IMG/VR virus record: IMGVR_UViG_3300005977_000012
Span: 1-9,942 of that record
DNA: 9,942 nt
Direction: 5' to 3' (one strand)
Shown here: piece by piece, positions 2 to 9,726 of the stretch
Layout of the letters: the number at the start of each line of letters is the position of its first letter
Position numbering within the stretch: the stretch's first letter is position 1
The notes under the pieces: model-generated
The model's input: only the letters and a program-made list of their open reading frames with translations
Database searches by the model: none
What the model was told of the DNA's origin: nothing
Program-made: the position numbers and the translations under genes

Positions 2-475
2 GGCACGCTTTTCGATACTTCTGCCAGGTGGAACGAATGCGAGAAGCTAGCCAACGGAAACAAACGTATGTTTTGGGAATGCTATCAATCACCGAGGTTC
101 ATGAACCTGGATAAGCCTAAGTGGGACGTTATCACGTTTGTGCAACAGTTGATTGAAGAGAAAAAGCCAGAAGTGATAGCAGTAGTCAGTGGGCGTTCGG
201 AAAAACAGCGTGAAGACACTCTCAAACAGCTGTCTGCGATAGGGATAGAGCCAAACGAGGTCGTGCTGAGGGCTGAGAAGGACTTCAGGAAAGACCATGA
301 GTTTAAGAGCGATGTGGTAAGGAAGCTCAGGGAAAAATATGGAGAGGGTAAGGTAATAGCGATAGATGATAGTGACGCGGTGCTACAATATTTGGGAAAA
401 GAAGGGGAGATAGAAGTAATAGATGCGAAAAAGATAGAAAAAAAAGAGAGAAAGGAGAATACGAATACCCTGTGA
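2..475 (+). CDS. HAD-superfamily phosphatase (PNKP/PseT 3'-phosphatase-like), 5'-truncated by window edge
   Basis: The frame is open upstream of the called ATG at 68, from position 2: GTLFDTSARWNECEKLANGNKRMFWEC... GTLFD is the tail of HAD motif I (DxDGTL). Motif II is VVSGR, the motif III Lys lies in KDHEFK, and motif IV is AIDDS. Confidence 0.8.
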   Translation, partial: GTLFDTSARWNECEKLANGNKRMFWECYQSPRFMNLDKPKWDVITFVQQLIEEKKPEVIAVVSGRSEKQREDTLKQLSAIGIEPNEVVLRAEKDFRKDHEFKSDVVRKLREKYGEGKVIAIDDSDAVLQYLGKEGEIEVIDAKKIEKKERKENTNTL

Positions 476-1243: not shown

Positions 1244-1849
1244 TCAGAACACATAGAACTTTCTCTGCATCGATGAATAGTGCCAAAGCCTTCCGAATCC
1301 TGCCAACTGCGATAGCTGTACTACAAGCTCGTACGGTAGCCCAGAAATATAGACTCCTCCTTGTTTTAGTAACAATTTAATTTTCTCGAATTCGTTCAAT
1401 TCTATAGTAATCACTTCTGTATCGTTGTATTTTTTACTTAATAATTCTAAAGCATACTTTGCTAGAAACAGTGGCGATTTCTCATCGGCACTAAGTACTT
1501 CTTTCGTCGTTATAAAGTACTTTAGTGATATCGTATGGCGTAAAACTAAAATTGCCCCTATAATTCCGCCTGTCCCGCTAACTGCTACAGAGGCAGGGGA
1601 GGAGATTCTGGCATCTGTAACTAATTGATTGTAAACGAACTCTACTGGCACCTGTGGTGCTTGCTCGGCACTGTTTATTGCAAAATCGACGTGTTGCCTT
1701 TCGATCCTAGGAGACTTTAGGATGGTCTCCCAGGTTATTTGCTGGGTTGTTTGCGTAGAATTAGGATTTGTTTGATTTGTAGAATTAGGATTATTAGGAT
1801 TTGTTTTAACTTGTGATTGGGGGTTTGATTTAACTTGTGGAGAGGACAT
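1244..1849 (-). CDS. Hypothetical protein, 201 aa, N/P/Q/T-rich disordered N-terminus
   Basis: ORF 31 nt downstream of TATA CTTAAATA (1881-1888). The N-terminus is built from 24-nt-period repeats (1755-1768/1779-1792; 1805-1815/1829-1839). Confidence 0.85.
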   Translation of the reverse strand: MSSPQVKSNPQSQVKTNPNNPNSTNQTNPNSTQTTQQITWETILKSPRIERQHVDFAINSAEQAPQVPVEFVYNQLVTDARISSPASVAVSGTGGIIGAILVLRHTISLKYFITTKEVLSADEKSPLFLAKYALELLSKKYNDTEVITIELNEFEKIKLLLKQGGVYISGLPYELVVQLSQLAGFGRLWHYSSMQRKFYVF

Positions 1850-1880
1850 ATTTGATCAATCGTATTTTTGCCAAACCAGA

Positions 1881-1909
1881 TATTTAAGTTTTCTGCACAA
1901 CCAGTTAGG
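1881..1909 (-). promoter_or_regulatory. Palindrome-BRE-TATA promoter module, copy 1
   Basis: Minus strand CCTAAC TG GTTGTG CAGAAAA CTTAAATA; aligns gap-free with copies 2-5. Confidence 0.8.
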
Positions 1910-1957
1910 AGGAAAAGAGGTTGAGGCGAGTGAGGAGGAGGGAAGAAAGAAGATATC

Positions 1958-1999
1958 AAACAGATGTTTATGAGAAGAAATAAATAAAAAACGGGTTAG
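1958..1999 (-). terminator. Conserved cassette 3' module A (oligo-T terminator + AAACAGnTGTTT palindrome)
   Basis: Plus strand AAACAGATGTTT-14 nt purine-rich-ATAAAAAACGGGTTAG, 9 nt past the stop of ORF 2009-2542. Near-identical to 3011-3052. Confidence 0.75.
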
Positions 2000-2008
2000 T
2001 TTCAGATT

Positions 2009-2542
2009 TCAGAGTACCTTATCATAATACTCCCATTCCCTTCTTTTCCTCTCCTCCAAATACTCTTCCAAATATCTGTCGATACATTGTATGATATCGA
2101 TATCGTTGATCCTCGAGTCATTTGAATCATCAACATACGCCATGTTACCAGGCTTCGGCATGATCTCTATAAACTTTTTCAGTATTGTGTGTGCCTTCGG
2201 ATCGCTTAGTATATCCCATAGTTCATTGTAATAGTGCATCCCATACTCTAAGATAACAGTTTCTTTAATGCCGTCAGTGTCCACATTGACTTCTTTTATC
2301 GTTATTATTGCTGAATTTAGTGGTGCAAACACCCATAAGCTAAACTTAAAGTACTTACCATGTAAAAGTTGGTAGATTAATCTGTTGTTCTGTTTGTCTA
2401 CCTTTGCAGGTCTTAAAAACTTGCCCCTTGCAAAGAGTAGTTCATGTTTAATGCTTTCTGTTATATGACCGTCTGTTCTATGCCTACTTGTTGCACTATA
2501 ATGCCTACTTGTTACACTATACTCTATTTCTTGCCTTGCCAT
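2009..2542 (-). CDS. Hypothetical protein, ~177 aa; possible distant AcrIIIB1 (SIRV2 gp48)-like family member
   Basis: ATG at 2542 is preferred over TTG at 2554, which lies only 20 nt from the TATA box, at or before the expected TSS. The pattern FLRP...YxLLxGKYxKFSLW...DPxAxxILKxFI resembles, from memory, Sulfolobales virus proteins of that family; unverified. Confidence 0.8.
   Translation of the reverse strand: MARQEIEYSVTSRHYSATSRHRTDGHITESIKHELLFARGKFLRPAKVDKQNNRLIYQLLHGKYFKFSLWVFAPLNSAIITIKEVNVDTDGIKETVILEYGMHYYNELWDILSDPKAHTILKKFIEIMPKPGNMAYVDDSNDSRINDIDIIQCIDRYLEEYLEERKRREWEYYDKVL
2480..2521. repeat. 21-bp in-frame tandem duplication (YSVTSRH/YSATSRH)
   Basis: ATGCCTACTTGTTGCACTATA (2480-2500) and ATGCCTACTTGTTACACTATA (2501-2521); 1 mismatch. 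Confidence 0.95.
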
Positions 2543-2574
2543 TCTTTTCCCCAATATACTTTCGATAACGAAAA

Positions 2575-2610
2575 TATATAAATTTTCTGCCTAACCTATT
2601 AGGCAGAAAA
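2575..2610 (-). promoter_or_regulatory. Promoter module copy 2 with a perfect 28-bp inverted repeat
   Basis: TTTTCTGCCTAA-CCTA-TTAGGCAGAAAA (2583-2610) abuts TATA box TTTATATA (2575-2582, minus strand). Confidence 0.85.
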
Positions 2611-2686
2611 GGATAGAATAAACACCGTATACCATCCTTCAAGACGCGGAGCAGATCGAGGGCTTGGTACGGCGAAAACAACTCTA

Positions 2687-2727
2687 AAATAGCTGTTTGA
2701 AAAAAGAAAGGATAAAAAACGGGTCGG
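2687..2727 (-). terminator. Conserved cassette 3' module B
   Basis: Plus strand AAATAGCTGTTT-13 nt purine-rich-ATAAAAAACGGGTCGG, 8 nt past the stop of ORF 2736-2921. Confidence 0.7.
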
Positions 2728-2735
2728 CTTTTAGG

Positions 2736-2921
2736 TTACGATGTAAGCGAATATAACTTATATAACTCCATCTGGATTTTTTGCACAGCAAAATAAGCTT
2801 CACCTAGCTTATTTTTGTCCAGATTATCCTTCTTAATCTCATCAACAAATTGTTGCAACTCACTGAGATCATTTTTTAGCATTTCTATGATTTTGTCCAC
2901 CATTATTTCATCCGGGTTCAT
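2736..2921 (-). CDS. Small helical hypothetical protein, 61 aa, probably leaderless
   Basis: ATG lies 25 nt downstream of TATA TTTAAATA (2947-2954). The ORF is bracketed by the promoter and terminator modules and has an amphipathic helical pattern. Confidence 0.8.
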   Translation of the reverse strand: MNPDEIMVDKIIEMLKNDLSELQQFVDEIKKDNLDKNKLGEAYFAVQKIQMELYKLYSLTS

Positions 2922-2931
2922 TGCACTTAAT

Positions 2932-2994
2932 TATTGTTAAGGCTGGTATTTAAATCTTCTGCCCAACTAGTTAGACGGGAAATGACGAGCTGGA
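2932..2994 (-). promoter_or_regulatory. Promoter module copy 3; 63-bp direct repeat of 3282-3344
   Basis: 61/63 identical to 3282-3344 (offset 350 bp). Core on the minus strand is TCTAAC TA GTTGGG CAGAAGA TTTAAATA (2947-2975). Confidence 0.9.
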
Positions 2995-3010
2995 TACGCC
3001 TAAAACTCGA

Positions 3011-3052
3011 AAACAGCTGTTTGCGAGAAGAAGCGAATAAAAAACGGGTTAG
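3011..3052 (-). terminator. Conserved cassette 3' module C
   Basis: Plus strand AAACAGCTGTTT-GCGAGAAGAAGCGA-ATAAAAAACGGGTTAG, 6 nt past the stop of the 3059-3259 ORF. Confidence 0.75.
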
Positions 3053-3058
3053 ATTAGC

Positions 3059-3259
3059 TCACATCGAAACACTGTCCTCGTCGTAACCATAGTCGAAATC
3101 TGCGTCGTCAAATCTATACACAACATTAGTGCAGTCCTCCTCGTCGTAATTGTCTAGACAAAGCTCTTCATACAGCATTTCTAGCATTTCATCTTTTTCA
3201 TCTTTTTTCGTCCACTTCTTCTTTTTGGGAGTGAGAGTCTTTTTGGGAGTGAGAGCCGT
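3059..3259 (-). CDS. Unannotated 66-aa basic-N/acidic-C protein with ACG at the start position (non-canonical start or start-lost pseudogene)
   Basis: Minus strand GAGGTG-TTCTAG-ACG, then an open frame (M)ALTPKKTLTPKKKKWTKKDEKDEMLEMLYEELCLDNYDEEDCTNVVYRFDDADFDYGYDEDSVSM*. It fills the slot between promoter copy 4 and terminator C. Confidence 0.7.
   Translation of the reverse strand, partial: TALTPKKTLTPKKKKWTKKDEKDEMLEMLYEELCLDNYDEEDCTNVVYRFDDADFDYGYDEDSVSM
3220..3255. repeat. 18-bp perfect in-frame tandem duplication
   Basis: TCTTTTTGGGAGTGAGAG at 3220-3237 and 3238-3255 (LTPKK repeated). Confidence 0.95.
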
Positions 3260-3281
3260 CTAGAACACCTCAATTATCAAC

Positions 3282-3344
3282 TATTGTTAAGGCTGGTATT
3301 TAAATCTTCTGCCCAACTAGTTAGATGGGAAATCACGAGCTGGA
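3282..3344 (-). promoter_or_regulatory. Promoter module copy 4; direct repeat of 2932-2994
   Basis: Core 3297-3325 is identical to 2947-2975; AACAGCTGTT lies at 3344-3353. Confidence 0.9.
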
Positions 3345-3392
3345 ACAGCTGTTGTCTAAGAGCTTAAAAACAAGTTTCCCCTAGATTAAAGT

Positions 3393-4346
3393 ATGGCTAT
3401 GGATTTTCGTCAGGAAGAAGGCAATAAAAACATCGTCAACGACTCATTTGAATTCTTCGTCGATCTCGTCAGGACGAGTCCAAAACGCACTAAGGCTGAG
3501 AAAACATCACTTAAGGTTACTGAATTAGCTAAAAACGGTTTTGTCGTAACAGCAAAAATTAGAACTTTGACTGCTTCGGGTTTTCCAGAGGTATTTGATA
3601 AGCTTGCGGAAAAGGCTGACGAGTTTGCTAATTCAGTATCGGAATTTACTGGGGCTGAGCTAATTGATGATAAAAATTACAGGGTCAGGGAAGCCTCAAT
3701 ACTCTCCTTTTTAATATTAACAGACGCTATGAAGTCCTTAAAAATACTTGAGAAGCTGGACAACCTAATAAATAAATTAACTCTGCGTGAATACCTTTAC
3801 CTCTACAACTCCAAACTCCCCTTGCTGAACGCGGAAATAGGAGATATCCTAAGGTTTGCGAAGGAGGTGTGCGGTGACGCCTGCAATAATTTATCTGTTG
3901 AAAATCTCCGCAACGGGCTTGTCCCTCTTCTGCTAATGGGTCTAAGCAGTGAGATCAGTCTGGACGAGGAAGGGAAGAAGAAGAGGTATATGACTACGGG
4001 GTTAGGATTATACATTCTTAATTTCTTAAAATCTCATAACACGTATACCCTGGATAAGGCAAGTTATAAAGAATTAATACGCAACCTGAATAATATATTC
4101 GATTTGCATAAATTTATCGTCAAAAATATATCGGATCTTATAAACGAATCCCCGATGTCTATCTATTCGAGATACTACGGAGACAAGAGCTATTCTCCAG
4201 GCTTATTAGAATTAGACATGGCAAATTTTATGCTAAGTATCGCTTATCAGTACGACGAAATGTCAAGTAAAATATCGCCGAGATACTTAGCTGACTTTCC
4301 GAGGTTGAACCTAAATTATATATTAAATAGGATTATCTTGGCTTAG
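3393..4346 (+). CDS. Hypothetical protein, 317 aa, with a probable internal winged helix-turn-helix
   Basis: Long ORF divergent from the cassette array, with TATA-like CTTAAAAA at 3364-3371 (leaderless). The segment LSVENLRNGLVPLLLMGLSSE...GKKKRYMTTGLG fits the wHTH recognition helix + wing pattern (LxxLxxxGL...Yx[LT]TxxG). Confidence 0.8.
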   Translation: MAMDFRQEEGNKNIVNDSFEFFVDLVRTSPKRTKAEKTSLKVTELAKNGFVVTAKIRTLTASGFPEVFDKLAEKADEFANSVSEFTGAELIDDKNYRVREASILSFLILTDAMKSLKILEKLDNLINKLTLREYLYLYNSKLPLLNAEIGDILRFAKEVCGDACNNLSVENLRNGLVPLLLMGLSSEISLDEEGKKKRYMTTGLGLYILNFLKSHNTYTLDKASYKELIRNLNNIFDLHKFIVKNISDLINESPMSIYSRYYGDKSYSPGLLELDMANFMLSIAYQYDEMSSKISPRYLADFPRLNLNYILNRIILA

Positions 4347-4583: not shown

Positions 4584-4641
4584 CTGTGTTTTCACCTATT
4601 ATATAATTATGAGTTATAGCCTTAAAAAGTGGTCGAGATAG

Positions 4642-5370
4642 TTAGGCAGAAAGCTTACGCAAGATTTCGACGGCGTCTTTTGTCTGAGTGTATCGTACAA
4701 TATATCTGTAATCTTGATGACCCGTTATCTTCGCAATAAGTGCGGGGTCTGTGGCATTTTTTACAAGGAAGGAGATCGGTGCGTATCGTAACGAATGTGT
4801 ATTAATCTTCAGGTACTTCCGTGCAAACATTCTTAGCCTCGCTTTTAGTTTATCATCAGCGATTGTGAGTATCGATTTGTACGCTGATCTGTTTCTGATA
4901 ACCTCAGGAATAATGAAGACCCTTGTATTACCGTGCTTTTCTGCTTGAAGCCAGAACTCCCTTTGTCCTGACTCAACAAACGTCTTAAAAGCCCTTATCG
5001 CCTCGCCTATTCTAGCTCCGTTTAACAGCTGTATGAGGAGGATAGCGACGTACGCCTCCTGGGGCATCAAGTTGATATCAAACAGCTGTTTGTACGCAGA
5101 CGTGAGTACTTTCTTTGCTTCGAGGAAATCCACGGAGTAGTCCCAACTGTGTTCTATCTTCTTCTTGCCGAGCGGTCTCAGGATCTTCTTAAGTAACTCA
5201 CTCTCCTCTCTCTTTCCTTTCTTCTTCTCCTCCTTCAGCCCCAGCTTCACTGCGATAAGGTCGACGATATCCTTCCATCCCTTCTCCCTAGCTTCTTTAA
5301 GATACTCCAGAAGTTTAGGAGAGTTGTCTGGAAGGTTCTGAATTATTTGTTTAAGTTCGTCCTTGTCCAT
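4642..5370 (-). CDS. int: Tyrosine recombinase/integrase, short form (~242 aa)
   Basis: Catalytic set R (NGARIGE), K (AEKHG), HxxR (THSLRY), H (TGH) and Y (VRYTQ). ATG 5370 follows the methyltransferase stop (alternative GTG 5379). Confidence 0.92.
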   Translation of the reverse strand: MDKDELKQIIQNLPDNSPKLLEYLKEAREKGWKDIVDLIAVKLGLKEEKKKGKREESELLKKILRPLGKKKIEHSWDYSVDFLEAKKVLTSAYKQLFDINLMPQEAYVAILLIQLLNGARIGEAIRAFKTFVESGQREFWLQAEKHGNTRVFIIPEVIRNRSAYKSILTIADDKLKARLRMFARKYLKINTHSLRYAPISFLVKNATDPALIAKITGHQDYRYIVRYTQTKDAVEILRKLSA

Positions 5371-5375
5371 TTTTC

Positions 5376-5999
5376 TCACATCCCTTTAGAACTATACTTG
5401 TCAATCACGTTATCATGTTCTAAATTGAATACACAAACGTCAATGTTAGTATTAATTTTGTCTTTCTCCTTTACGTTGCAAAACGTTATCCATACAACTT
5501 TTTCTGAAACCTTATTGAGCATATTCAGGATTTCATCATGTTTGTCCAGTCCCGAATAAACCCCTACATCATACTTGCCCAGGTACTGCAGGTCATCTTC
5601 TGTTACATACTTGATGACGTAGTTGAGGCTAAGCCCCTTTTCCACCACCTCTGGGAAAATGTAGTTACTGTAAATTACAGCATAAGGAGCCCAGCCTTCG
5701 AAAGTATCTACATGTTTAGCATAATGCGACAATACATAAGCTAAATACCCGTTACCTCCTCCTATTTCAATTACCTTCTTGCCCTTGACGATATCCACGA
5801 GTTTTTCAAGTTCCTTAATTTTACTCACGTCGTCGTAATCCCAAACCAACGGCACTTTCCAGCCTAAGTCCTCGTCTACTCTTGCGTATTTGATCGACAT
5901 CCTCATTGACTGTTTCTCGGCGTGACTGTCAATAGTGTAAATGATATTCTTAGGGATTATTTTAGGGCGTATTTCACCAATTTCCTTAAGTTCAATCAT
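5376..5999 (-). CDS. Class I SAM-dependent methyltransferase, substrate unknown
   Basis: Motif I VIEIGGGNGYLA, acidic residue after beta2 (VDTFE), KYDVGVY strand; GGTGAGG RBS. Confidence 0.85.
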   Translation of the reverse strand: MIELKEIGEIRPKIIPKNIIYTIDSHAEKQSMRMSIKYARVDEDLGWKVPLVWDYDDVSKIKELEKLVDIVKGKKVIEIGGGNGYLAYVLSHYAKHVDTFEGWAPYAVIYSNYIFPEVVEKGLSLNYVIKYVTEDDLQYLGKYDVGVYSGLDKHDEILNMLNKVSEKVVWITFCNVKEKDKINTNIDVCVFNLEHDNVIDKYSSKGM

Positions 6000-7604: not shown

Positions 7605-8177
7605 TCACCCCTCCTCTTCAATTTTCCTTATTTCTATTTTAGTGTCATCACCAAACTCCACTCTGATTTTCTTGTACACACCAGGGATCTCTAAATATAG
7701 GACGTCAGCGTGGTTAAACCCAGTCCTCATCCTGACGTTTTCAACATCGTCAGGGTCTATAGGTTCGTTGCATTCGCTTATCTTGTATATAGAAGAAAGT
7801 GTAGCCTTGTTGCCTTCGACATCATATTCTAAAAGTACAGATAGTATTTCTCCACTTCTTCCTCTTATTACTCCGAATTCGTAAAATCTTGTATTTGAAG
7901 AATATATTATAATTGGAAGAGGAGCTATATCACATAAGGAAGACATTACAGATTTTAACATTAGATAGACGAATATTTTACTTATGTTACTATCTCCGTT
8001 TCTGTTCAGATTCTCACTAAGACTTGCAAGATGGACATAGAGACTCTCAAAACGCCGATGGGGTTCGAATTCATTTAGTTTGTCTTTTTTTATATTAAGC
8101 CACTCCCAAAAAAATTGAATTTCGTTCTCTTTATTTTGACTTAACTCCCTCTTATCGTTCATTTCGCTTTCCCTCAT
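7605..8177 (-). CDS. Hypothetical protein, 185-190 aa; first gene of a long leftward operon
   Basis: TATA-like TTTTTAAA at 8198-8205 (minus strand). Start is ATG 8177, or ATG 8162 with a GAGGG RBS. Confidence 0.8.
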   Translation of the reverse strand: MRESEMNDKRELSQNKENEIQFFWEWLNIKKDKLNEFEPHRRFESLYVHLASLSENLNRNGDSNISKIFVYLMLKSVMSSLCDIAPLPIIIYSSNTRFYEFGVIRGRSGEILSVLLEYDVEGNKATLSSIYKISECNEPIDPDDVENVRMRTGFNHADVLYLEIPGVYKKIRVEFGDDTKIEIRKIEEEG

Positions 8178-8279
8178 ATTATCCTCTCAAACAGAAGTTT
8201 AAAAAGCCCAACGAGTTTCGCTTTGGGCCGAAAGAGAAATGTTTTTAGTTCACCATTCCCATGTTTTATATGAGGGAAA
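8168..8279. promoter_or_regulatory. Divergent promoter region flanked by a 12-bp inverted repeat
   Basis: TTTCCCTCATAT (8168-8179) and ATATGAGGGAAA (8268-8279). TATA-like boxes on both strands, plus a degenerate palindrome GCCCAACGAGTT at 8206-8217. Confidence 0.6.
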
Positions 8280-8960
8280 ATGAAGGAAGTAAATTTAGAC
8301 GGATTGTTAAAAGCAGAATTAGTAAACATCGAAGAAAATAACGATAAGTTAAAAATAACGTTTAAGGTTACTGCCAGCGAGCCATTAGCGTTCAAACTTA
8401 ATAACAATGTTATTGCGATTACAGAACATTATGACATTTATGAAGTAGCTTTACAGGTATTTCCAGCAATAAAGCTCACATATTCAGTGAAAAATATTGC
8501 CACAGATAATAAAGAAATATCAACGTTTGAATATCTTATAGACATAGATACTCTGGGCTTCAGTGACTATGACGAATTTAAACAGTTTTTAATTAAATAT
8601 CCGAAATATATACGTTATCTGGAATTTGTGTACCGTCTCGTTAGCATGCGACCATGGTCATTCTTACTTAATATTTCTAGTATTTCATACAAAAATAATA
8701 TAAAATTTGGTAAAAATGAAATAGAAATAACTGTGGAAAAGGTACGCATCAGTAACTTCCTCGGGAAACACAATTTTAATGAAAATATAACGTTCAGAAT
8801 ACTGAACAGAAATAACTATGCAGTACTGTCTGTGGCAAATATCTCTCTTGTAGATTTCGGCATTAGTATTATGTATAATGACTTCATTAAAATACTAGAA
8901 GAAGAACCAAAACCAATATTGAACACATTAATAATGCTAATAATAACTCTACTAGACTGA
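8280..8960 (+). CDS. Hypothetical protein, 226 aa
   Basis: Long AT-rich ORF with a GAGGG RBS, followed by a T-rich tract at ~8988-9016. Confidence 0.8.
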   Translation: MKEVNLDGLLKAELVNIEENNDKLKITFKVTASEPLAFKLNNNVIAITEHYDIYEVALQVFPAIKLTYSVKNIATDNKEISTFEYLIDIDTLGFSDYDEFKQFLIKYPKYIRYLEFVYRLVSMRPWSFLLNISSISYKNNIKFGKNEIEITVEKVRISNFLGKHNFNENITFRILNRNNYAVLSVANISLVDFGISIMYNDFIKILEEEPKPILNTLIMLIITLLD

Positions 8961-9116
8961 CACGTTTAATTATGACCTAAAGCAAAAGTTTTTCCTTCCT
9001 CACCTATTTCTTTTCCCTGGAGCTGACCTCTGGGGGGGTCGAAAGAGAGAATAACTCCAACAGCTGTTTTAAGACTTTGCCATTCGTTCCGTTACCCTCC
9101 ATCACCCTACTTACCG

Positions 9117-9145
9117 TCTAACTGGTTAGACAGAAGGCTTAAATA
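9117..9145 (+). promoter_or_regulatory. Promoter module copy 5 (no ORF directly downstream)
   Basis: TCTAAC TG GTTAGA CAGAAGG CTTAAATA; palindrome GTCTAAC-TG-GTTAGAC at 9116-9131; AACAGCTGTT upstream at 9059-9068. Confidence 0.8.
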
Positions 9146-9194
9146 TTGGCGAGGCATAAATGCATATATCTTTTCTATTCTCATTTACTTTCAC

Positions 9195-9224
9195 CCTAAC
9201 TGATTAGGTAGAAAAGTATAAATA
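9195..9224 (+). promoter_or_regulatory. Promoter module copy 6
   Basis: CCTAAC TG ATTAGG TAGAAAAG TATAAATA, upstream of ORF 9259. Confidence 0.75.
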
Positions 9225-9258
9225 CCTGTTTAACAAATATGTTCAGAGGGTAGTATAA

Positions 9259-9726
9259 ATGACTACATTAAAATCCATAAAATCAGTAGTCATTGATATA
9301 ACACGCCTAGTTTTATTATTTCTAGTAATGTTTTTACCATTAATCTTTATAATCGTACTGAGTCAGTTAGCTGTATTGGCTGTAAAAATAGACTCACTAC
9401 TAGGAATTTTCTTGTTTTTACCTGCTGTTATACTTATGCATTATTTTCTTGGTAAGTACGGATCTATCTACAAATTAGTTTTCACAGGAGACGATATACA
9501 GTTTTCAGAAGAACACAAAGATATCAATATGGCACTGCTAGCAGGCTCAGCAATGTACTTAGTAACGATTATCGATATTTCGAGGCTTCTCATAAATACA
9601 CCTTGGTCTTTAACAAAAATTGGTCTAGGGATCATTATTGTACTTCTGCTCGTTTATGTTCTACATAATAGAAGCTACTATAATGCTTTAAAACTTATAG
9701 AAAAAATCTGGGGATTACTCTCCTAA
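9259..9726 (+). CDS. Membrane protein, ~4 TM helices; probably the N-terminal part of a disrupted longer gene
   Basis: Four long hydrophobic stretches and a GAGGGT RBS. The +1 frame continues from 9707 to the window end with only one stop (9812-9814). Confidence 0.75.
   Translation: MTTLKSIKSVVIDITRLVLLFLVMFLPLIFIIVLSQLAVLAVKIDSLLGIFLFLPAVILMHYFLGKYGSIYKLVFTGDDIQFSEEHKDINMALLAGSAMYLVTIIDISRLLINTPWSLTKIGLGIIIVLLLVYVLHNRSYYNALKLIEKIWGLLS

What the first reader, a model, noticed from the sequence alone, without database searches (positions are those of the whole stretch)
1881..3353. Tandem array of modular single-gene cassettes with shared 5' and 3' modules (integron-like or anti-defence array)
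Seen: on the minus strand the unit [29-bp palindrome-BRE-TATA] - [one unrelated small ORF] - [CTAACCCGTTTTTTAT...AAACAGCTGTTT module] occurs three times (ORFs 3059-3259, 2736-2921, 2009-2542). A fourth promoter module then heads 1244-1849. The flanks are conserved (one 63-bp repeat with 2 mismatches; 3' modules at 1958-1999, 2687-2727, 3011-3052) while the cargo genes share nothing. 3' modules A and C begin with CTAAC-NN-GTT, the same core as the promoter palindrome. A tyrosine recombinase lies 1.3 kb away. Established: early and anti-defence genes of Sulfolobales viruses tend to be small and share conserved strong promoters, and repeated promoter elements promote gene shuffling in some phages. 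Inference: this is an exchangeable cassette array for host-takeover/anti-CRISPR genes, shuffled by homologous or recombinase-mediated exchange between the modules.
Basis: partly seen in the sequence, partly recalled or inferred. Interest (0 to 1): 0.85.

Follow-up and report, generated by a model that had tools for sequence, protein, structure and literature searches.

The report
Shuffling gene cassettes in archaeal virus
In this hot-spring archaeal virus, small accessory genes are each boxed in by the same terminator-plus-promoter spacer, and about 35 related sequences show these spacers are where genes are gained, lost and reordered, much as in T4-like phages and not as in an integron.

Summary
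The window is an SMV3/SMV4-like bicaudavirus contig. On the minus strand, 3354-1850 holds three single-gene units followed by the virion-protein operon. Each unit is separated by a composite spacer: an oligo-T terminator, 14 nt, an AAACAGCTGTTT palindrome, a linker, then an imperfect palindrome overlapping BRE/TATA. None of these motifs is expected by chance.

The promoter part is already published as the "anti-defence gene" regulatory motif of SMV2-4 (Bhoobalan-Chitty 2024). That paper lists the syntenic SMV3 and SMV4 genes.

What appears new is the comparative result. About 35 related metagenomic loci carry 1-4 cassettes upstream of the same virion gene. They are drawn from at least 8 cargo families, in at least 15 architectures and in different orders. 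Homology breaks at the promoter core or at the terminator/CAGCTG block. One identical nuclease allele sits in three arrangements. This resembles PeSL-mediated modular shuffling in T4-like phages.

The integron or integrase reading is not supported: every cassette has its own promoter, there is no attC-like fold, and no breakpoint points to the integrase. An anti-defence role is plausible but untested. The same promoter class also drives a virion protein. One cargo ORF (3059-3259) has lost its start codon.

The parts
3343..3354 (.). CAGCTG palindrome variant (CAACAGCTGTTC) in the divergent intergenic region. It lies 30 nt upstream of promoter 1 and about 10 nt upstream of the TATA-like box of the plus-strand 317-aa gene.
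3282..3344 (-). Promoter module 1 (class D). Imperfect palindrome plus BRE/TATA core at 3324-3297, TATA at 3304-3297. It is one copy of the 63-bp repeat.
3059..3259 (-). Cargo C: small ORF with a basic N-terminus and acidic C-terminus. The ancestral ATG was lost through a 3-nt deletion. It carries in-frame 9- and 18-nt insertions, and its first ATG is at 3187. Intact 56-66-aa homologues exist in other contigs.
3011..3048 (-). Spacer block 1: oligo-T terminator CCCGTTTTTTAT (3048-3037), a 14-nt pyrimidine tract, then the AAACAGCTGTTT palindrome (3022-3011).
2932..2994 (-). Promoter module 2 (class D, leaderless), core 2974-2947. It is the second copy of the 63-bp repeat. It is a mosaic of an L021-type upstream part and a window/L010-type BRE.
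2736..2921 (-). Cargo B: 61-aa SSV1 D-63-family protein (helical hairpin, four-helix-bundle dimer). It is the most widespread cargo of these arrays.
   Evidence: Pfam PF20940 at 72 bits against a cut-off of 27; PDB 1SKV E 3.6e-10
2687..2723 (-). Spacer block 2: terminator (2723-2712), 14 nt, then the palindrome variant AAACAGCTATTT (2698-2687).
2575..2610 (-). Promoter module 3 (class F, TATATA box, Shine-Dalgarno leader). It contains a 12-bp-arm palindrome at 2610-2583 that overlaps BRE.
2009..2542 (-). Cargo A: 177-aa AFV1-ORF157-family nuclease (DUF3258). The equivalent of the catalytic Glu86 is aligned and conserved. The N-terminus carries an in-frame 21-bp tandem duplication (2480-2521).
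   Evidence: PDB 3II2 E 4.9e-18; Pfam PF11646 at 24.9 bits against a cut-off of 25; phrog_25994
1958..1995 (-). Spacer block 3: terminator (1995-1984), 14 nt, then the palindrome variant AAACATCTGTTT (1969-1958).
1881..1908 (-). Promoter module 4 (class V) heading the virion-protein operon. It is a recurrent homology breakpoint at its TATA end (window 1881-1882).
1244..1849 (-). Virion structural protein, a homologue of ATV ORF187. It forms the conserved right flank of the array, followed by a second virion protein at 501-1232.
   Evidence: phrog_17386 E 8e-90 and phrog_16306
3393..4346 (+). 317-aa protein of unknown function, divergently transcribed. It forms the left flank of the array in this lineage and is absent in several relatives.
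4642..5379 (-). Tyrosine integrase of the SMV/ATSV type. It is conserved in relatives, and no evidence links it to cassette exchange.
9058..9225 (+). A second site with the same grammar: CAGCTG palindrome (9058-9069), a promoter module with no ORF behind it (9118-9145), then a second palindrome promoter (9197-9225) driving the 155-aa membrane ORF at 9259-9726.

Best explanation
The segment is a hyperplastic accessory-gene region of an SMV-type bicaudavirus. It consists of monocistronic cassettes separated by one composite intergenic module: an oligo-T terminator, a pyrimidine tract, the AAACAGCTGTTT palindrome, a linker, and an imperfect palindromic operator overlapping BRE/TATA.

The module does two things.
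1. It insulates the cassettes and co-regulates them. The palindrome over BRE is most likely the operator of a dimeric, virus-encoded regulator. This step is inferred.
2. Because the same about 30-170 nt recur between unrelated genes, within a genome and between co-infecting relatives, the modules act as portable homology. Homologous recombination or short-patch gene conversion between them inserts, deletes, duplicates, replaces and reorders cassettes. The outcome is shown by comparison. The enzymology is inferred to be host or viral general recombination, not the integrase.

Functionally this is the archaeal-virus counterpart of the promoter-terminator PeSL cassettes of T4-like phages. The cargo is a pool of small accessory genes shared among Sulfolobales virus families. 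An anti-defence or host-takeover role for them is plausible but not shown.
For: Modules are real and non-random. They are conserved across relatives as one block.

The promoter motif occurs only in SMV-like contigs of IMG/VR. It is the motif class published for SMV2-4, with the syntenic SMV3 gp46-48 and SMV4 gp40 listed.

Variation: about 26 non-redundant related loci show at least 15 architectures upstream of the same virion gene. Examples are cassC-D63-NUC (window), D63-NUC-ZNF (L010), NUC-D63-ZNF (L027, L054), NUC-ZNF (L056), D63-ZNF-NUC-D63 (L058), D63-cassC (L021), cassC-D63 (L051) and D63 alone (L013, L014, L024).

Breakpoints:
- Window versus L010 is 97-100% identical up to the TATA of promoter 1, then collapses at window 3280.
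- Window versus L021 is 90-100% identical in the left flank and across the whole terminator-CAGCTG-promoter 2 block, with the two cargos swapped.
- Homology with L027, L052, L054, L056 and L058 (92-95%) ends at the TATA of promoter 4.
- L058 equals the window plus one extra ZNF cassette inserted between D63 and the nuclease, with the spacer duplicated. Its promoter is a three-part mosaic: window spacer, window promoter-4 core (37/37), then a new leader.
- Three flank classes reassort around the 28-nt core, giving D/F, D/V, F/V and V/D chimeras.
- Promoter 2 of the window is itself a mosaic.

A 100%-identical 171-aa nuclease allele lies in three arrangements in independent assemblies.

The left and right flanks have discordant relatedness. 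For L021 the left flank is 93% identical and the virion gene 72%. For L010 the figures are 95% and 88%.

Against: - All relatives are metagenome assemblies, so no rearrangement was observed happening. Misassembly is unlikely because exact shared runs are at most about 44 nt, and several architectures recur in independent JGI and ENA assemblies. It is still not formally excluded for singletons such as L014 and L058.
- The count of alignment ends in modules (88% against 33% of the region) is partly circular, because repeated modules generate short alignments by themselves.
- No transcription data exist for this virus, so the promoter, terminator and operator functions are inferred from archaeal consensus and from the cited paper.
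- The binding protein is unknown, and no obvious DNA-binding protein is encoded in the window.
- Module conservation could be explained by regulatory selection alone. Recombination would then be a by-product, not a selected property.
Confidence: 0.7

Rival explanations
1. Integron-like system. The nearby tyrosine recombinase excises and captures cassettes by site-specific recombination at the palindromic modules.
For: A tyrosine integrase lies 1.3 kb away. The modules contain palindromes. Cassettes vary in number and order.
Against: - Every cassette has its own promoter and terminator, whereas integron cassettes are promoterless.
- The spacer has no attC-like single-strand fold (z +0.44).
- Palindrome arms are 5-12 bp around a 2-4 bp centre, unlike a recombinase core site.
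- Crossover points vary within and at both edges of the 28-nt core and form patches.
- The integrase is the conserved SMV/ATSV genome integrase. It is separated from the array by other genes, and SMV4's other sites with this promoter lie about 7-9 kb from it.
Confidence: 0.05
2. An ordinary set of co-regulated monocistronic genes. The modules are alike only because they share a regulator, and the differences among relatives reflect vertical divergence, ordinary indels or assembly chimeras. There is no module-mediated exchange.
For: Promoter and terminator function alone would conserve the motifs. All comparison sequences are metagenomic contigs.
Against: - Identity drops abruptly from above 95% to noise exactly at module edges, while flanks and spacers stay collinear.
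- Cargo order is swapped.
- An identical nuclease allele lies in three contexts.
- Promoters are chimeric.
- The same architectures recur in independent assemblies (L012/L013; L017-19; L054, L055, L057, L059).
- Shared exact runs are too short to mislead assemblers.
Confidence: 0.08
3. Functional reading: the array is specifically an early-expressed anti-defence (anti-CRISPR, antitoxin) island. The palindrome is the operator of an Aca-like autorepressor. This could be true alongside the best explanation.
For: - The same motif class was used to predict anti-defence genes in SMV2-4, including the syntenic genes.
- In SMV4 the motif precedes an AcrIII-1/B116-family gene and an RHH (CopG) gene.
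- A C2H2-like protein and the D-63 protein (labelled 'ADa' in the paper) are recurrent cargo.
- The genes are small, variable and non-core.
Against: - The same promoter class heads the virion structural operon here and in 15 or more relatives.
- None of the three cargo genes of the window belongs to a validated Acr family.
- There are no expression-timing data.
- One cargo gene is start-less.
Confidence: 0.35

Closest known systems
PeSL (promoter-early stem-loop) mobile regulatory cassettes of T4-like phages (Arbiol 2010, PMC2839356; Comeau 2014, PMC4122927)
   Same: Both are composite terminator/promoter motifs repeated between small, non-essential, often ORFan genes in hyperplastic regions. 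In both, insertions, deletions and replacements between relatives have end points in the motifs, and homologous recombination between motifs is the proposed mechanism.
   Different: Here the virus and transcription machinery are archaeal: BRE/TATA with a palindromic operator in place of a sigma-70 promoter, and an oligo-T terminator without a stem-loop. There is an extra AAACAGCTGTTT palindrome. Mini-circles have not been looked for. The exchanged homology can be as short as the 28-nt core.
Regulatory-sequence-defined putative anti-defence genes of archaeal viruses (Bhoobalan-Chitty et al. 2024, PMC11065993)
   Same: It is the same promoter class (conserved BRE/TATA with inverted repeats overlapping BRE) in the same virus group. 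SMV3 gp46-48 and SMV4 gp40, syntenic with this array, are in their list.
   Different: The words recombination, shuffling and terminator do not occur in that paper's main text, and it mentions neither the terminator/CAGCTG half of the module nor cassette order variation. It states that such genes lie 'randomly' in SMV genomes. The proposed regulator, SMV2 gp37, has no detectable similarity to the D-63 cargo tested here; other window proteins were not compared with it.
Integron (IntI, attI, attC cassettes)
   Same: Both are tandem arrays of single-gene cassettes of unrelated function with conserved boundaries and variable content. A tyrosine recombinase is in the neighbourhood.
   Different: Here the cassettes carry their own promoters and terminators. 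There is no attC-like folded site, no attI/Pc arrangement, and the integrase is not adjacent.
Intergenic repeats of halovirus HF2 that carry promoters (PMC8707807)
   Same: This is an archaeal virus with families of repeated intergenic sequences that contain promoters (abstract seen).
   Different: It is a tailed haloarchaeal virus with unrelated sequences. I did not read the paper beyond its abstract, so I cannot say whether cassette shuffling was shown.
Aca-controlled acr operons of phages
   Same: Both have a palindromic operator overlapping a strong promoter in front of small variable genes. Candidate autoregulators (RHH, C2H2-like) lie under the same promoter class in relatives.
   Different: No regulator-operator pair has been demonstrated. 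The units here are monocistronic, not an acr-aca operon.

Membership tests
PeSL-type modular shuffling cassettes | A composite promoter plus terminator motif repeated in intergenic regions of a variable region | tested here: met
   The terminator-CAGCTG-operator/TATA block occurs 3-4 times in the window and is conserved in about 35 related loci.
PeSL-type modular shuffling cassettes | Indels, replacements and reorderings between relatives end in the motifs | tested here: met
PeSL-type modular shuffling cassettes | A sigma-70 early promoter and a stem-loop terminator | tested here: not met
   The promoter is archaeal BRE/TATA and the terminator is an oligo-T tract. The spacer has no significant fold, and sigma-70-like hits are at chance level. 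The array therefore works like a PeSL but is not a member by sequence.
PeSL-type modular shuffling cassettes | Excised mini-circles from motif-to-motif exchange | not testable with these tools
   This needs reads or inverse PCR.
Integron | Promoterless cassettes, each ending in a folded attC site | tested here: not met
   Each cassette has its own BRE/TATA promoter. The spacer's ssDNA fold has z +0.44.
Integron | An IntI-type integrase adjacent to attI and a common promoter Pc | tested here: not met
   The integrase is of the SMV/ATSV type (phrog_9208). It is separated from the array by the 72-aa and 317-aa genes, and in relatives by varying content.
SMV-type regulatory-motif regulon (putative anti-defence genes, PMC11065993) | Conserved BRE/TATA with virus-specific inverted repeats upstream of the gene | tested here: met
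   The syntenic SMV3 and SMV4 genes are listed in the paper's Supplementary Data 1.
SMV-type regulatory-motif regulon (putative anti-defence genes, PMC11065993) | Transcription immediately after infection | not testable with these tools
   No transcriptome is available for this virus.
SMV-type regulatory-motif regulon (putative anti-defence genes, PMC11065993) | Demonstrated inhibition of a host defence | not tested
   Support is indirect only: SMV4 gp61 (PF08960, the B116/AcrIII-1 family) has the same promoter.
SSV1 D-63 family (cargo B) | Match to Pfam PF20940 above the gathering score, and to the solved structure 1SKV | tested here: met
   72 bits against 27; 1SKV E 3.6e-10 over residues 5-59.
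AFV1 ORF157 nuclease family (cargo A) | Sequence match to 3II2/DUF3258 with the catalytic Glu86 retained | tested here: met
   3II2 E 4.9e-18 over residues 25-161. A Glu is aligned with Glu86 (residue role from PMC4187194). The Pfam score of 24.9 is just under the cut-off of 25. Nuclease activity was not tested.

The most novel reading that the evidence does not exclude
The palindromic operator/promoter cores are not merely passive homology but dedicated exchange sites of an archaeal-virus gene-cassette system. In this reading a site- or structure-specific enzyme cuts at the palindromes, releases cassette circles and captures them in co-infecting genomes. Candidates are the recurrent AFV1-ORF157-type nuclease, whose fold distantly resembles retroviral integrase, or the neighbouring integrase. 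This would be a functional analogue of integrons that evolved independently in viruses of Archaea.
Probability: 0.06. Interest if true: 0.9.

Novelty: new variant of a known kind. Interest (0 to 1): 0.58.

Why it matters
Archaeal virus genomes are notoriously mosaic and full of small ORFans, but the mechanics of accessory-gene turnover are poorly documented. This locus gives a concrete, sequence-defined mechanism. A composite terminator/operator/promoter spacer both regulates the cassettes and serves as the exchange point.

The natural variant series shows insertion, deletion, reordering and promoter-core patches. It suggests that the PeSL principle, known from T4-like bacteriophages, has arisen independently on archaeal transcription signals.

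Practically, it does three things:
- It refines the published promoter-based hunt for archaeal anti-defence genes. Hits should be read as cassettes, terminator/CAGCTG blocks can delimit them, and the same promoter also drives a virion gene.
- It points to a second, undescribed genome-wide palindromic motif.
- It offers short, portable regulatory modules for Sulfolobales genetics.

Tried and rejected
- Two mistyped versions of the promoter pattern found nothing in the window. The same typos in collection scans only picked up a variant with one extra base before TATA. The corrected pattern was used.
- A scan of 185,579 species genomes for the virion protein found no provirus, so no integrated copy or att site could be examined.
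- No tRNA, tmRNA or Rfam family is present in the window. The bacterial promoter/terminator scan is uninformative for an archaeal virus.
- SMV2 gp37, the regulator proposed in the literature, is not related to the D-63 cargo and has no Pfam hit.
- The 317-aa flank protein has no Pfam, PHROG or PDB relative.
- A literature search for the CAGCTG palindrome returned only unrelated papers.
- I considered and rejected the idea that the virion protein might be the ATV RNA-polymerase inhibitor ORF145. It is the homologue of ATV ORF187.
- The statistic on alignment ends is reported only with the caveat that it is partly circular.
- The partial promoter-like string at 4641-4657 was not pursued.
Full report
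WHAT THE WINDOW IS. The 9,942-bp window is a complete IMG/VR contig (UViG_3300005977_000012, also JGI Ga0081474_124580). It is about 82% identical over 54% of its length to Sulfolobus monocaudavirus SMV4, and over 20% to SMV3 (Bicaudaviridae). The region of the finding is the least conserved part: only 41% (SMV3) and 18% (SMV4) of 1850-3400 aligns, at 73-76% identity. The gene order is as follows.
- A polynucleotide kinase-phosphatase fragment.
- Two virion structural proteins on the minus strand (501-1232 and 1244-1849; the latter is the homologue of ATV ORF187).
- The array.
- A divergently transcribed 317-aa gene (3393-4346).
- A 72-aa gene.
- A tyrosine integrase (4642-5379).
- Further conserved genes of unknown function.

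CHECK OF THE OBSERVATION.
- The promoter core has five copies with <=2 mismatches against none expected in 200 shuffles. It consists of the half-sites CTAAC and GTTAG two bases apart, then CAGAA, three bases and a TTTAAATA or TTTATATA box. Four copies lie on the minus strand (3324-3297, 2974-2947, 2602-2575, 1908-1881) and one on the plus strand (9118-9145).
- The inverted repeat extends into the BRE region. In promoter 3 it forms 12-bp arms.
- The 63-bp repeat (2932-2994 and 3282-3344) differs at two positions.
- Each of the three cargo genes is followed by CCCGTTTTTTAT, a 14-nt pyrimidine tract and the 12-bp palindrome AAACAGCTGTTT or a one-mismatch variant.
- The three cargo ORFs are unrelated to each other.

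Three corrections are needed.
- First, ORF 3059-3259 begins with ACG. An alignment with the orthologous cassette of locus L021 shows that a 3-nt deletion removed the ATG behind a GAGGTG Shine-Dalgarno motif. Two in-frame insertions are also present. A nearly identical 66-aa version with an intact ATG exists on an ENA contig. The window copy is either translated from the internal ATG at 3187 (42 aa) or is decaying.
- Second, the CAGCTG palindrome is not a property of gene 3' ends. One copy lies upstream of promoter 1, where no gene ends on that strand. Another lies 49 nt upstream of the plus-strand promoter at 9118. Further copies sit inside genes.
- Third, the fourth promoter heads a virion-protein operon.

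WHAT THE CARGO IS.
- Cargo B (2736-2921) is a clear member of the SSV1 D-63 family (Pfam 72 bits against a cut-off of 27; PDB 1SKV).
- Cargo A (2009-2542) is a homologue of AFV1 ORF157 (PDB 3II2, E 5e-18). That protein is described as a new class of nuclease with catalytic Glu86, and the equivalent Glu is aligned here.
- Cargo C belongs to a tiny family known only from metagenomes, with a basic N-terminus and a very acidic C-terminus.
- These cargo families are shared with fuselloviruses and the filamentous virus AFV1. The cargo pool is therefore common to Sulfolobales viruses and is not specific to bicaudaviruses.

WHAT IS ALREADY KNOWN. Bhoobalan-Chitty et al. (2024, PMC11065993) derived virus-specific consensus regulatory sequences and used them to predict "anti-defence genes". 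For SMV2 they note inverted repeats overlapping BRE and propose a repressor. Their Supplementary Data 1 lists four genes that are syntenic with this array:
- SMV3 gp46, the virion protein homologue;
- SMV3 gp47;
- SMV3 gp48, the D-63 homologue, labelled a helix-turn-helix "ADa";
- SMV4 gp40.
The promoter half of the finding, and its reading as an early/anti-defence signal, is therefore published for the nearest relatives. The words recombination, shuffling and terminator do not occur in the paper's main text.

COMPARATIVE TEST. I collected 28 metagenomic loci through the virion protein, nine more through exact cargo proteins, and SMV3 and SMV4. All show the same grammar upstream of the virion gene: promoter, one small gene, terminator, CAGCTG palindrome, next promoter. 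Content is anything but fixed. In the orientation of the virion gene (VP) the arrays read as follows.
- cassC-D63-NUC: the window.
- D63-NUC-ZNF: L010.
- NUC-D63-ZNF: L027, L052, L054, L055, L057, L059.
- NUC-ZNF-52aa: L056.
- D63-ZNF-NUC-D63: L058.
- D63-cassC: L021.
- cassC-D63: L051.
- D63-ZNF: SMV3, L019.
- D63-s80: L036.
- D63 plus a long D63-like gene: L020.
- The long D63-like gene alone: SMV4.
- D63 alone: L013, L014, L024.
- ZNF plus a reversed 91-aa gene: L030.
- The reversed gene alone: L005.
The 317-aa left-flank gene is itself present or absent. Several architectures recur in independent JGI and ENA assemblies. The longest exact run shared by two modules is about 44 nt. Assembly chimeras are therefore an unlikely general explanation, although singletons cannot be certified.

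WHERE HOMOLOGY BREAKS.
- Sliding identity between the window and L010 is 97-100% through the 317-aa gene and promoter 1. It collapses within about 20 nt after the TATA box, at window 3280.
- Against L021, identity is 90-100% in the left flank and promoter 1, at noise level across the cargo, 90-100% again across the whole terminator-CAGCTG-promoter 2 block, and at noise level again. The two genomes carry the same two cargo families in opposite order, on a collinear scaffold of modules.
- Homology of 92-95% with L027, L052, L054, L056 and L058 runs through the nuclease gene and its downstream spacer. It stops at the TATA end of promoter 4. Behind it those genomes carry D63 or ZNF, not the virion gene.
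- L058 is the clearest case. It has the window's D-63 allele (96% aa, 93.5% nt) and the nuclease (92% aa), with one extra ZNF cassette between them and the spacer duplicated. The promoter of the inserted cassette consists of the window's spacer upstream part, a core identical (37/37) to the window's promoter 4, and a different leader.
- Across all loci the sequences flanking the 28-nt core fall into three classes. Class D is leaderless, with cargo D63, cassC or s80. Class F has a TATATA box and a Shine-Dalgarno leader, with cargo ZNF, NUC or long D63-like. Class V has a pyrimidine-rich upstream region, with the virion gene as cargo.
- Most promoters are concordant, but D/F, D/V, F/V and V/D chimeras exist.
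- The window's promoter 2 combines an L021-type upstream part with the BRE variant of the window's own promoter 1.
- A 100%-identical 171-aa nuclease allele occurs in three different arrangements.
- The two flanks of the array have discordant relatedness to the window. For L021 the left flank is 93% identical and the virion gene 72%. For L010 the figures are 95% and 88%.
- Alignment ends are concentrated in the modules (88% against 33% of the region). That figure is inflated by the repeats themselves, and I give it little weight.

MECHANISM. The data fit recombination between modules: reciprocal exchange or short-patch conversion, within a genome or between co-infecting relatives. They do not fit a site-specific system.
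- Crossovers are not at one fixed phosphodiester. They lie at the 5' edge of the core, inside it, at the TATA end, shortly after the start codon (L022 and L058 against the window), or in the terminator/CAGCTG block (L051, L058).
- The spacer has no single-strand structure (z +0.44).
- Every cassette has its own promoter.
- The integrase is the conserved genome integrase of the group. It is not adjacent to the array, and SMV4's other sites with this promoter lie about 7-9 kb from it.

The closest known system is therefore the PeSL cassette of T4-like phages, not the integron. It is a functional analogue, not a member. The signals here are archaeal (BRE/TATA and oligo-T, no stem-loop), and there is an additional palindrome. 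From general knowledge, not tested here, Sulfolobus recombination tolerates very short homology and produces short, discontinuous conversion tracts. That would suit 28-nt cores.

REGULATION AND FUNCTION. In SMV4 the same promoter class precedes four genes:
- gp40;
- an RHH/CopG protein (gp58; PF01402);
- a B116/AcrIII-1-family protein (gp61; PF08960);
- more weakly, the virion gene.
Across all loci it drives D-63 homologues, the virion protein, a 120-aa protein with a C2H2-like motif (sub-threshold Pfam hits), the nuclease, coiled-coil proteins and membrane proteins. The palindrome over BRE is most simply the operator of a dimeric regulator. RHH or C2H2-like cargo under the same promoter would then be autoregulated, as with Aca proteins. 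This is inference, and none of these candidates is encoded in the window. An anti-defence role for the window's cargo is possible, but it is weakened by the virion operon sharing the promoter class.

SECOND MOTIF. AAACAGCTGTTT is strongly over-represented. The window has 6 sites with <=1 mismatch against 0.03 expected. SMV4 has 29 sites in 50 kb, 17 of them in the 12% of non-coding DNA. In SMV4 many intergenic copies are preceded by a T-run and followed by GAG and a TATA-like box just upstream of a start codon. This looks like a second operator/promoter class. In the arrays the motif sits 14 nt after the terminator and 18-84 nt before the other palindrome. I found no description of it. Its role is open: an insulator or roadblock, an upstream activator site, or a repressor site.

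VERDICT. The cassette-exchange idea is supported by natural variants, with homologous rather than integrase-mediated exchange. The integron analogy is rejected. The anti-defence function is left open. The promoter motif is published. The composite module and its role as the exchange point appear to be a new, archaeal variant of a mechanism known from T4-like phages.

Noticed in passing
window 224-235, 1958-1969, 2687-2698, 3011-3022, 3343-3354, 5080-5091, 9058-9069; SMV4 locus L049 genome-wide: The 12-bp palindrome AAACAGCTGTTT is a genome-wide motif of SMV-type viruses. The window has 6 sites against 0.03 expected. SMV4 has 29 sites in 50 kb, 17 of them in the 12% non-coding DNA. Many SMV4 copies are followed by GAG and a TATA-like box just before a start codon, as if this were a second operator/promoter class. 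No description was found in the literature searched.
   Followed up: partly
window 9118-9145 (+) and 9197-9225 (+): There is an orphan promoter module with no ORF behind it. About 50 nt downstream lies a second palindrome promoter that drives the 155-aa membrane ORF at 9259-9726. At the equivalent place locus L007 carries a 187-aa gene (7833-8396, minus strand). This may be the footprint of a lost cassette.
   Followed up: partly
window 3257-3262 and 3187: Cargo C has lost its ATG through a 3-nt deletion relative to L021. Protein P0009 on ENA contig L051 keeps the ATG in an otherwise near-identical 66-aa version. One public gene call for the window reads this ORF from ATG 3187 through the TGA stop, as if TGA coded for Trp.
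   Followed up: yes
window 2480-2521 and about 3210-3250: Two cargo genes carry in-frame tandem duplications: 21 bp x2 in the N-terminus of the nuclease, and 18 bp x2 in cargo C. A short-period repeat also encodes the Asn/Thr/Pro-rich N-terminus of the virion protein (1755-1811).
   Followed up: no
window 4641-4657 (+): A partial promoter-like string (GTTAGGCAGAAAGCTTA, no TATA box) sits at the stop codon of the integrase, on the opposite strand. It resembles the promoter of SMV2 gp37, the proposed regulator gene. It could be a remnant or chance.
   Followed up: no
window 5080-5091; SMV4 locus L001 7238-7249: A perfect CAGCTG palindrome lies inside the integrase gene at a conserved position. 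In SMV4 the integrase is annotated as two pieces (gp44, gp45) that split exactly around this site.
   Followed up: no
loci L006, L007, L008: A promoter variant with one extra base between CAGAA and the TATA box (CAGAAAAGTTTAAATA) is used in other SMV-like contigs, including an IMG/VR contig of 48.8 kb.
   Followed up: no
locus L058 (ENA ERZ27246777, 1748 bp): This array carries two different D-63 alleles: one 96% identical to the window's, and a second partial copy downstream of the nuclease. The cassette family is therefore duplicated within one genome.
   Followed up: partly
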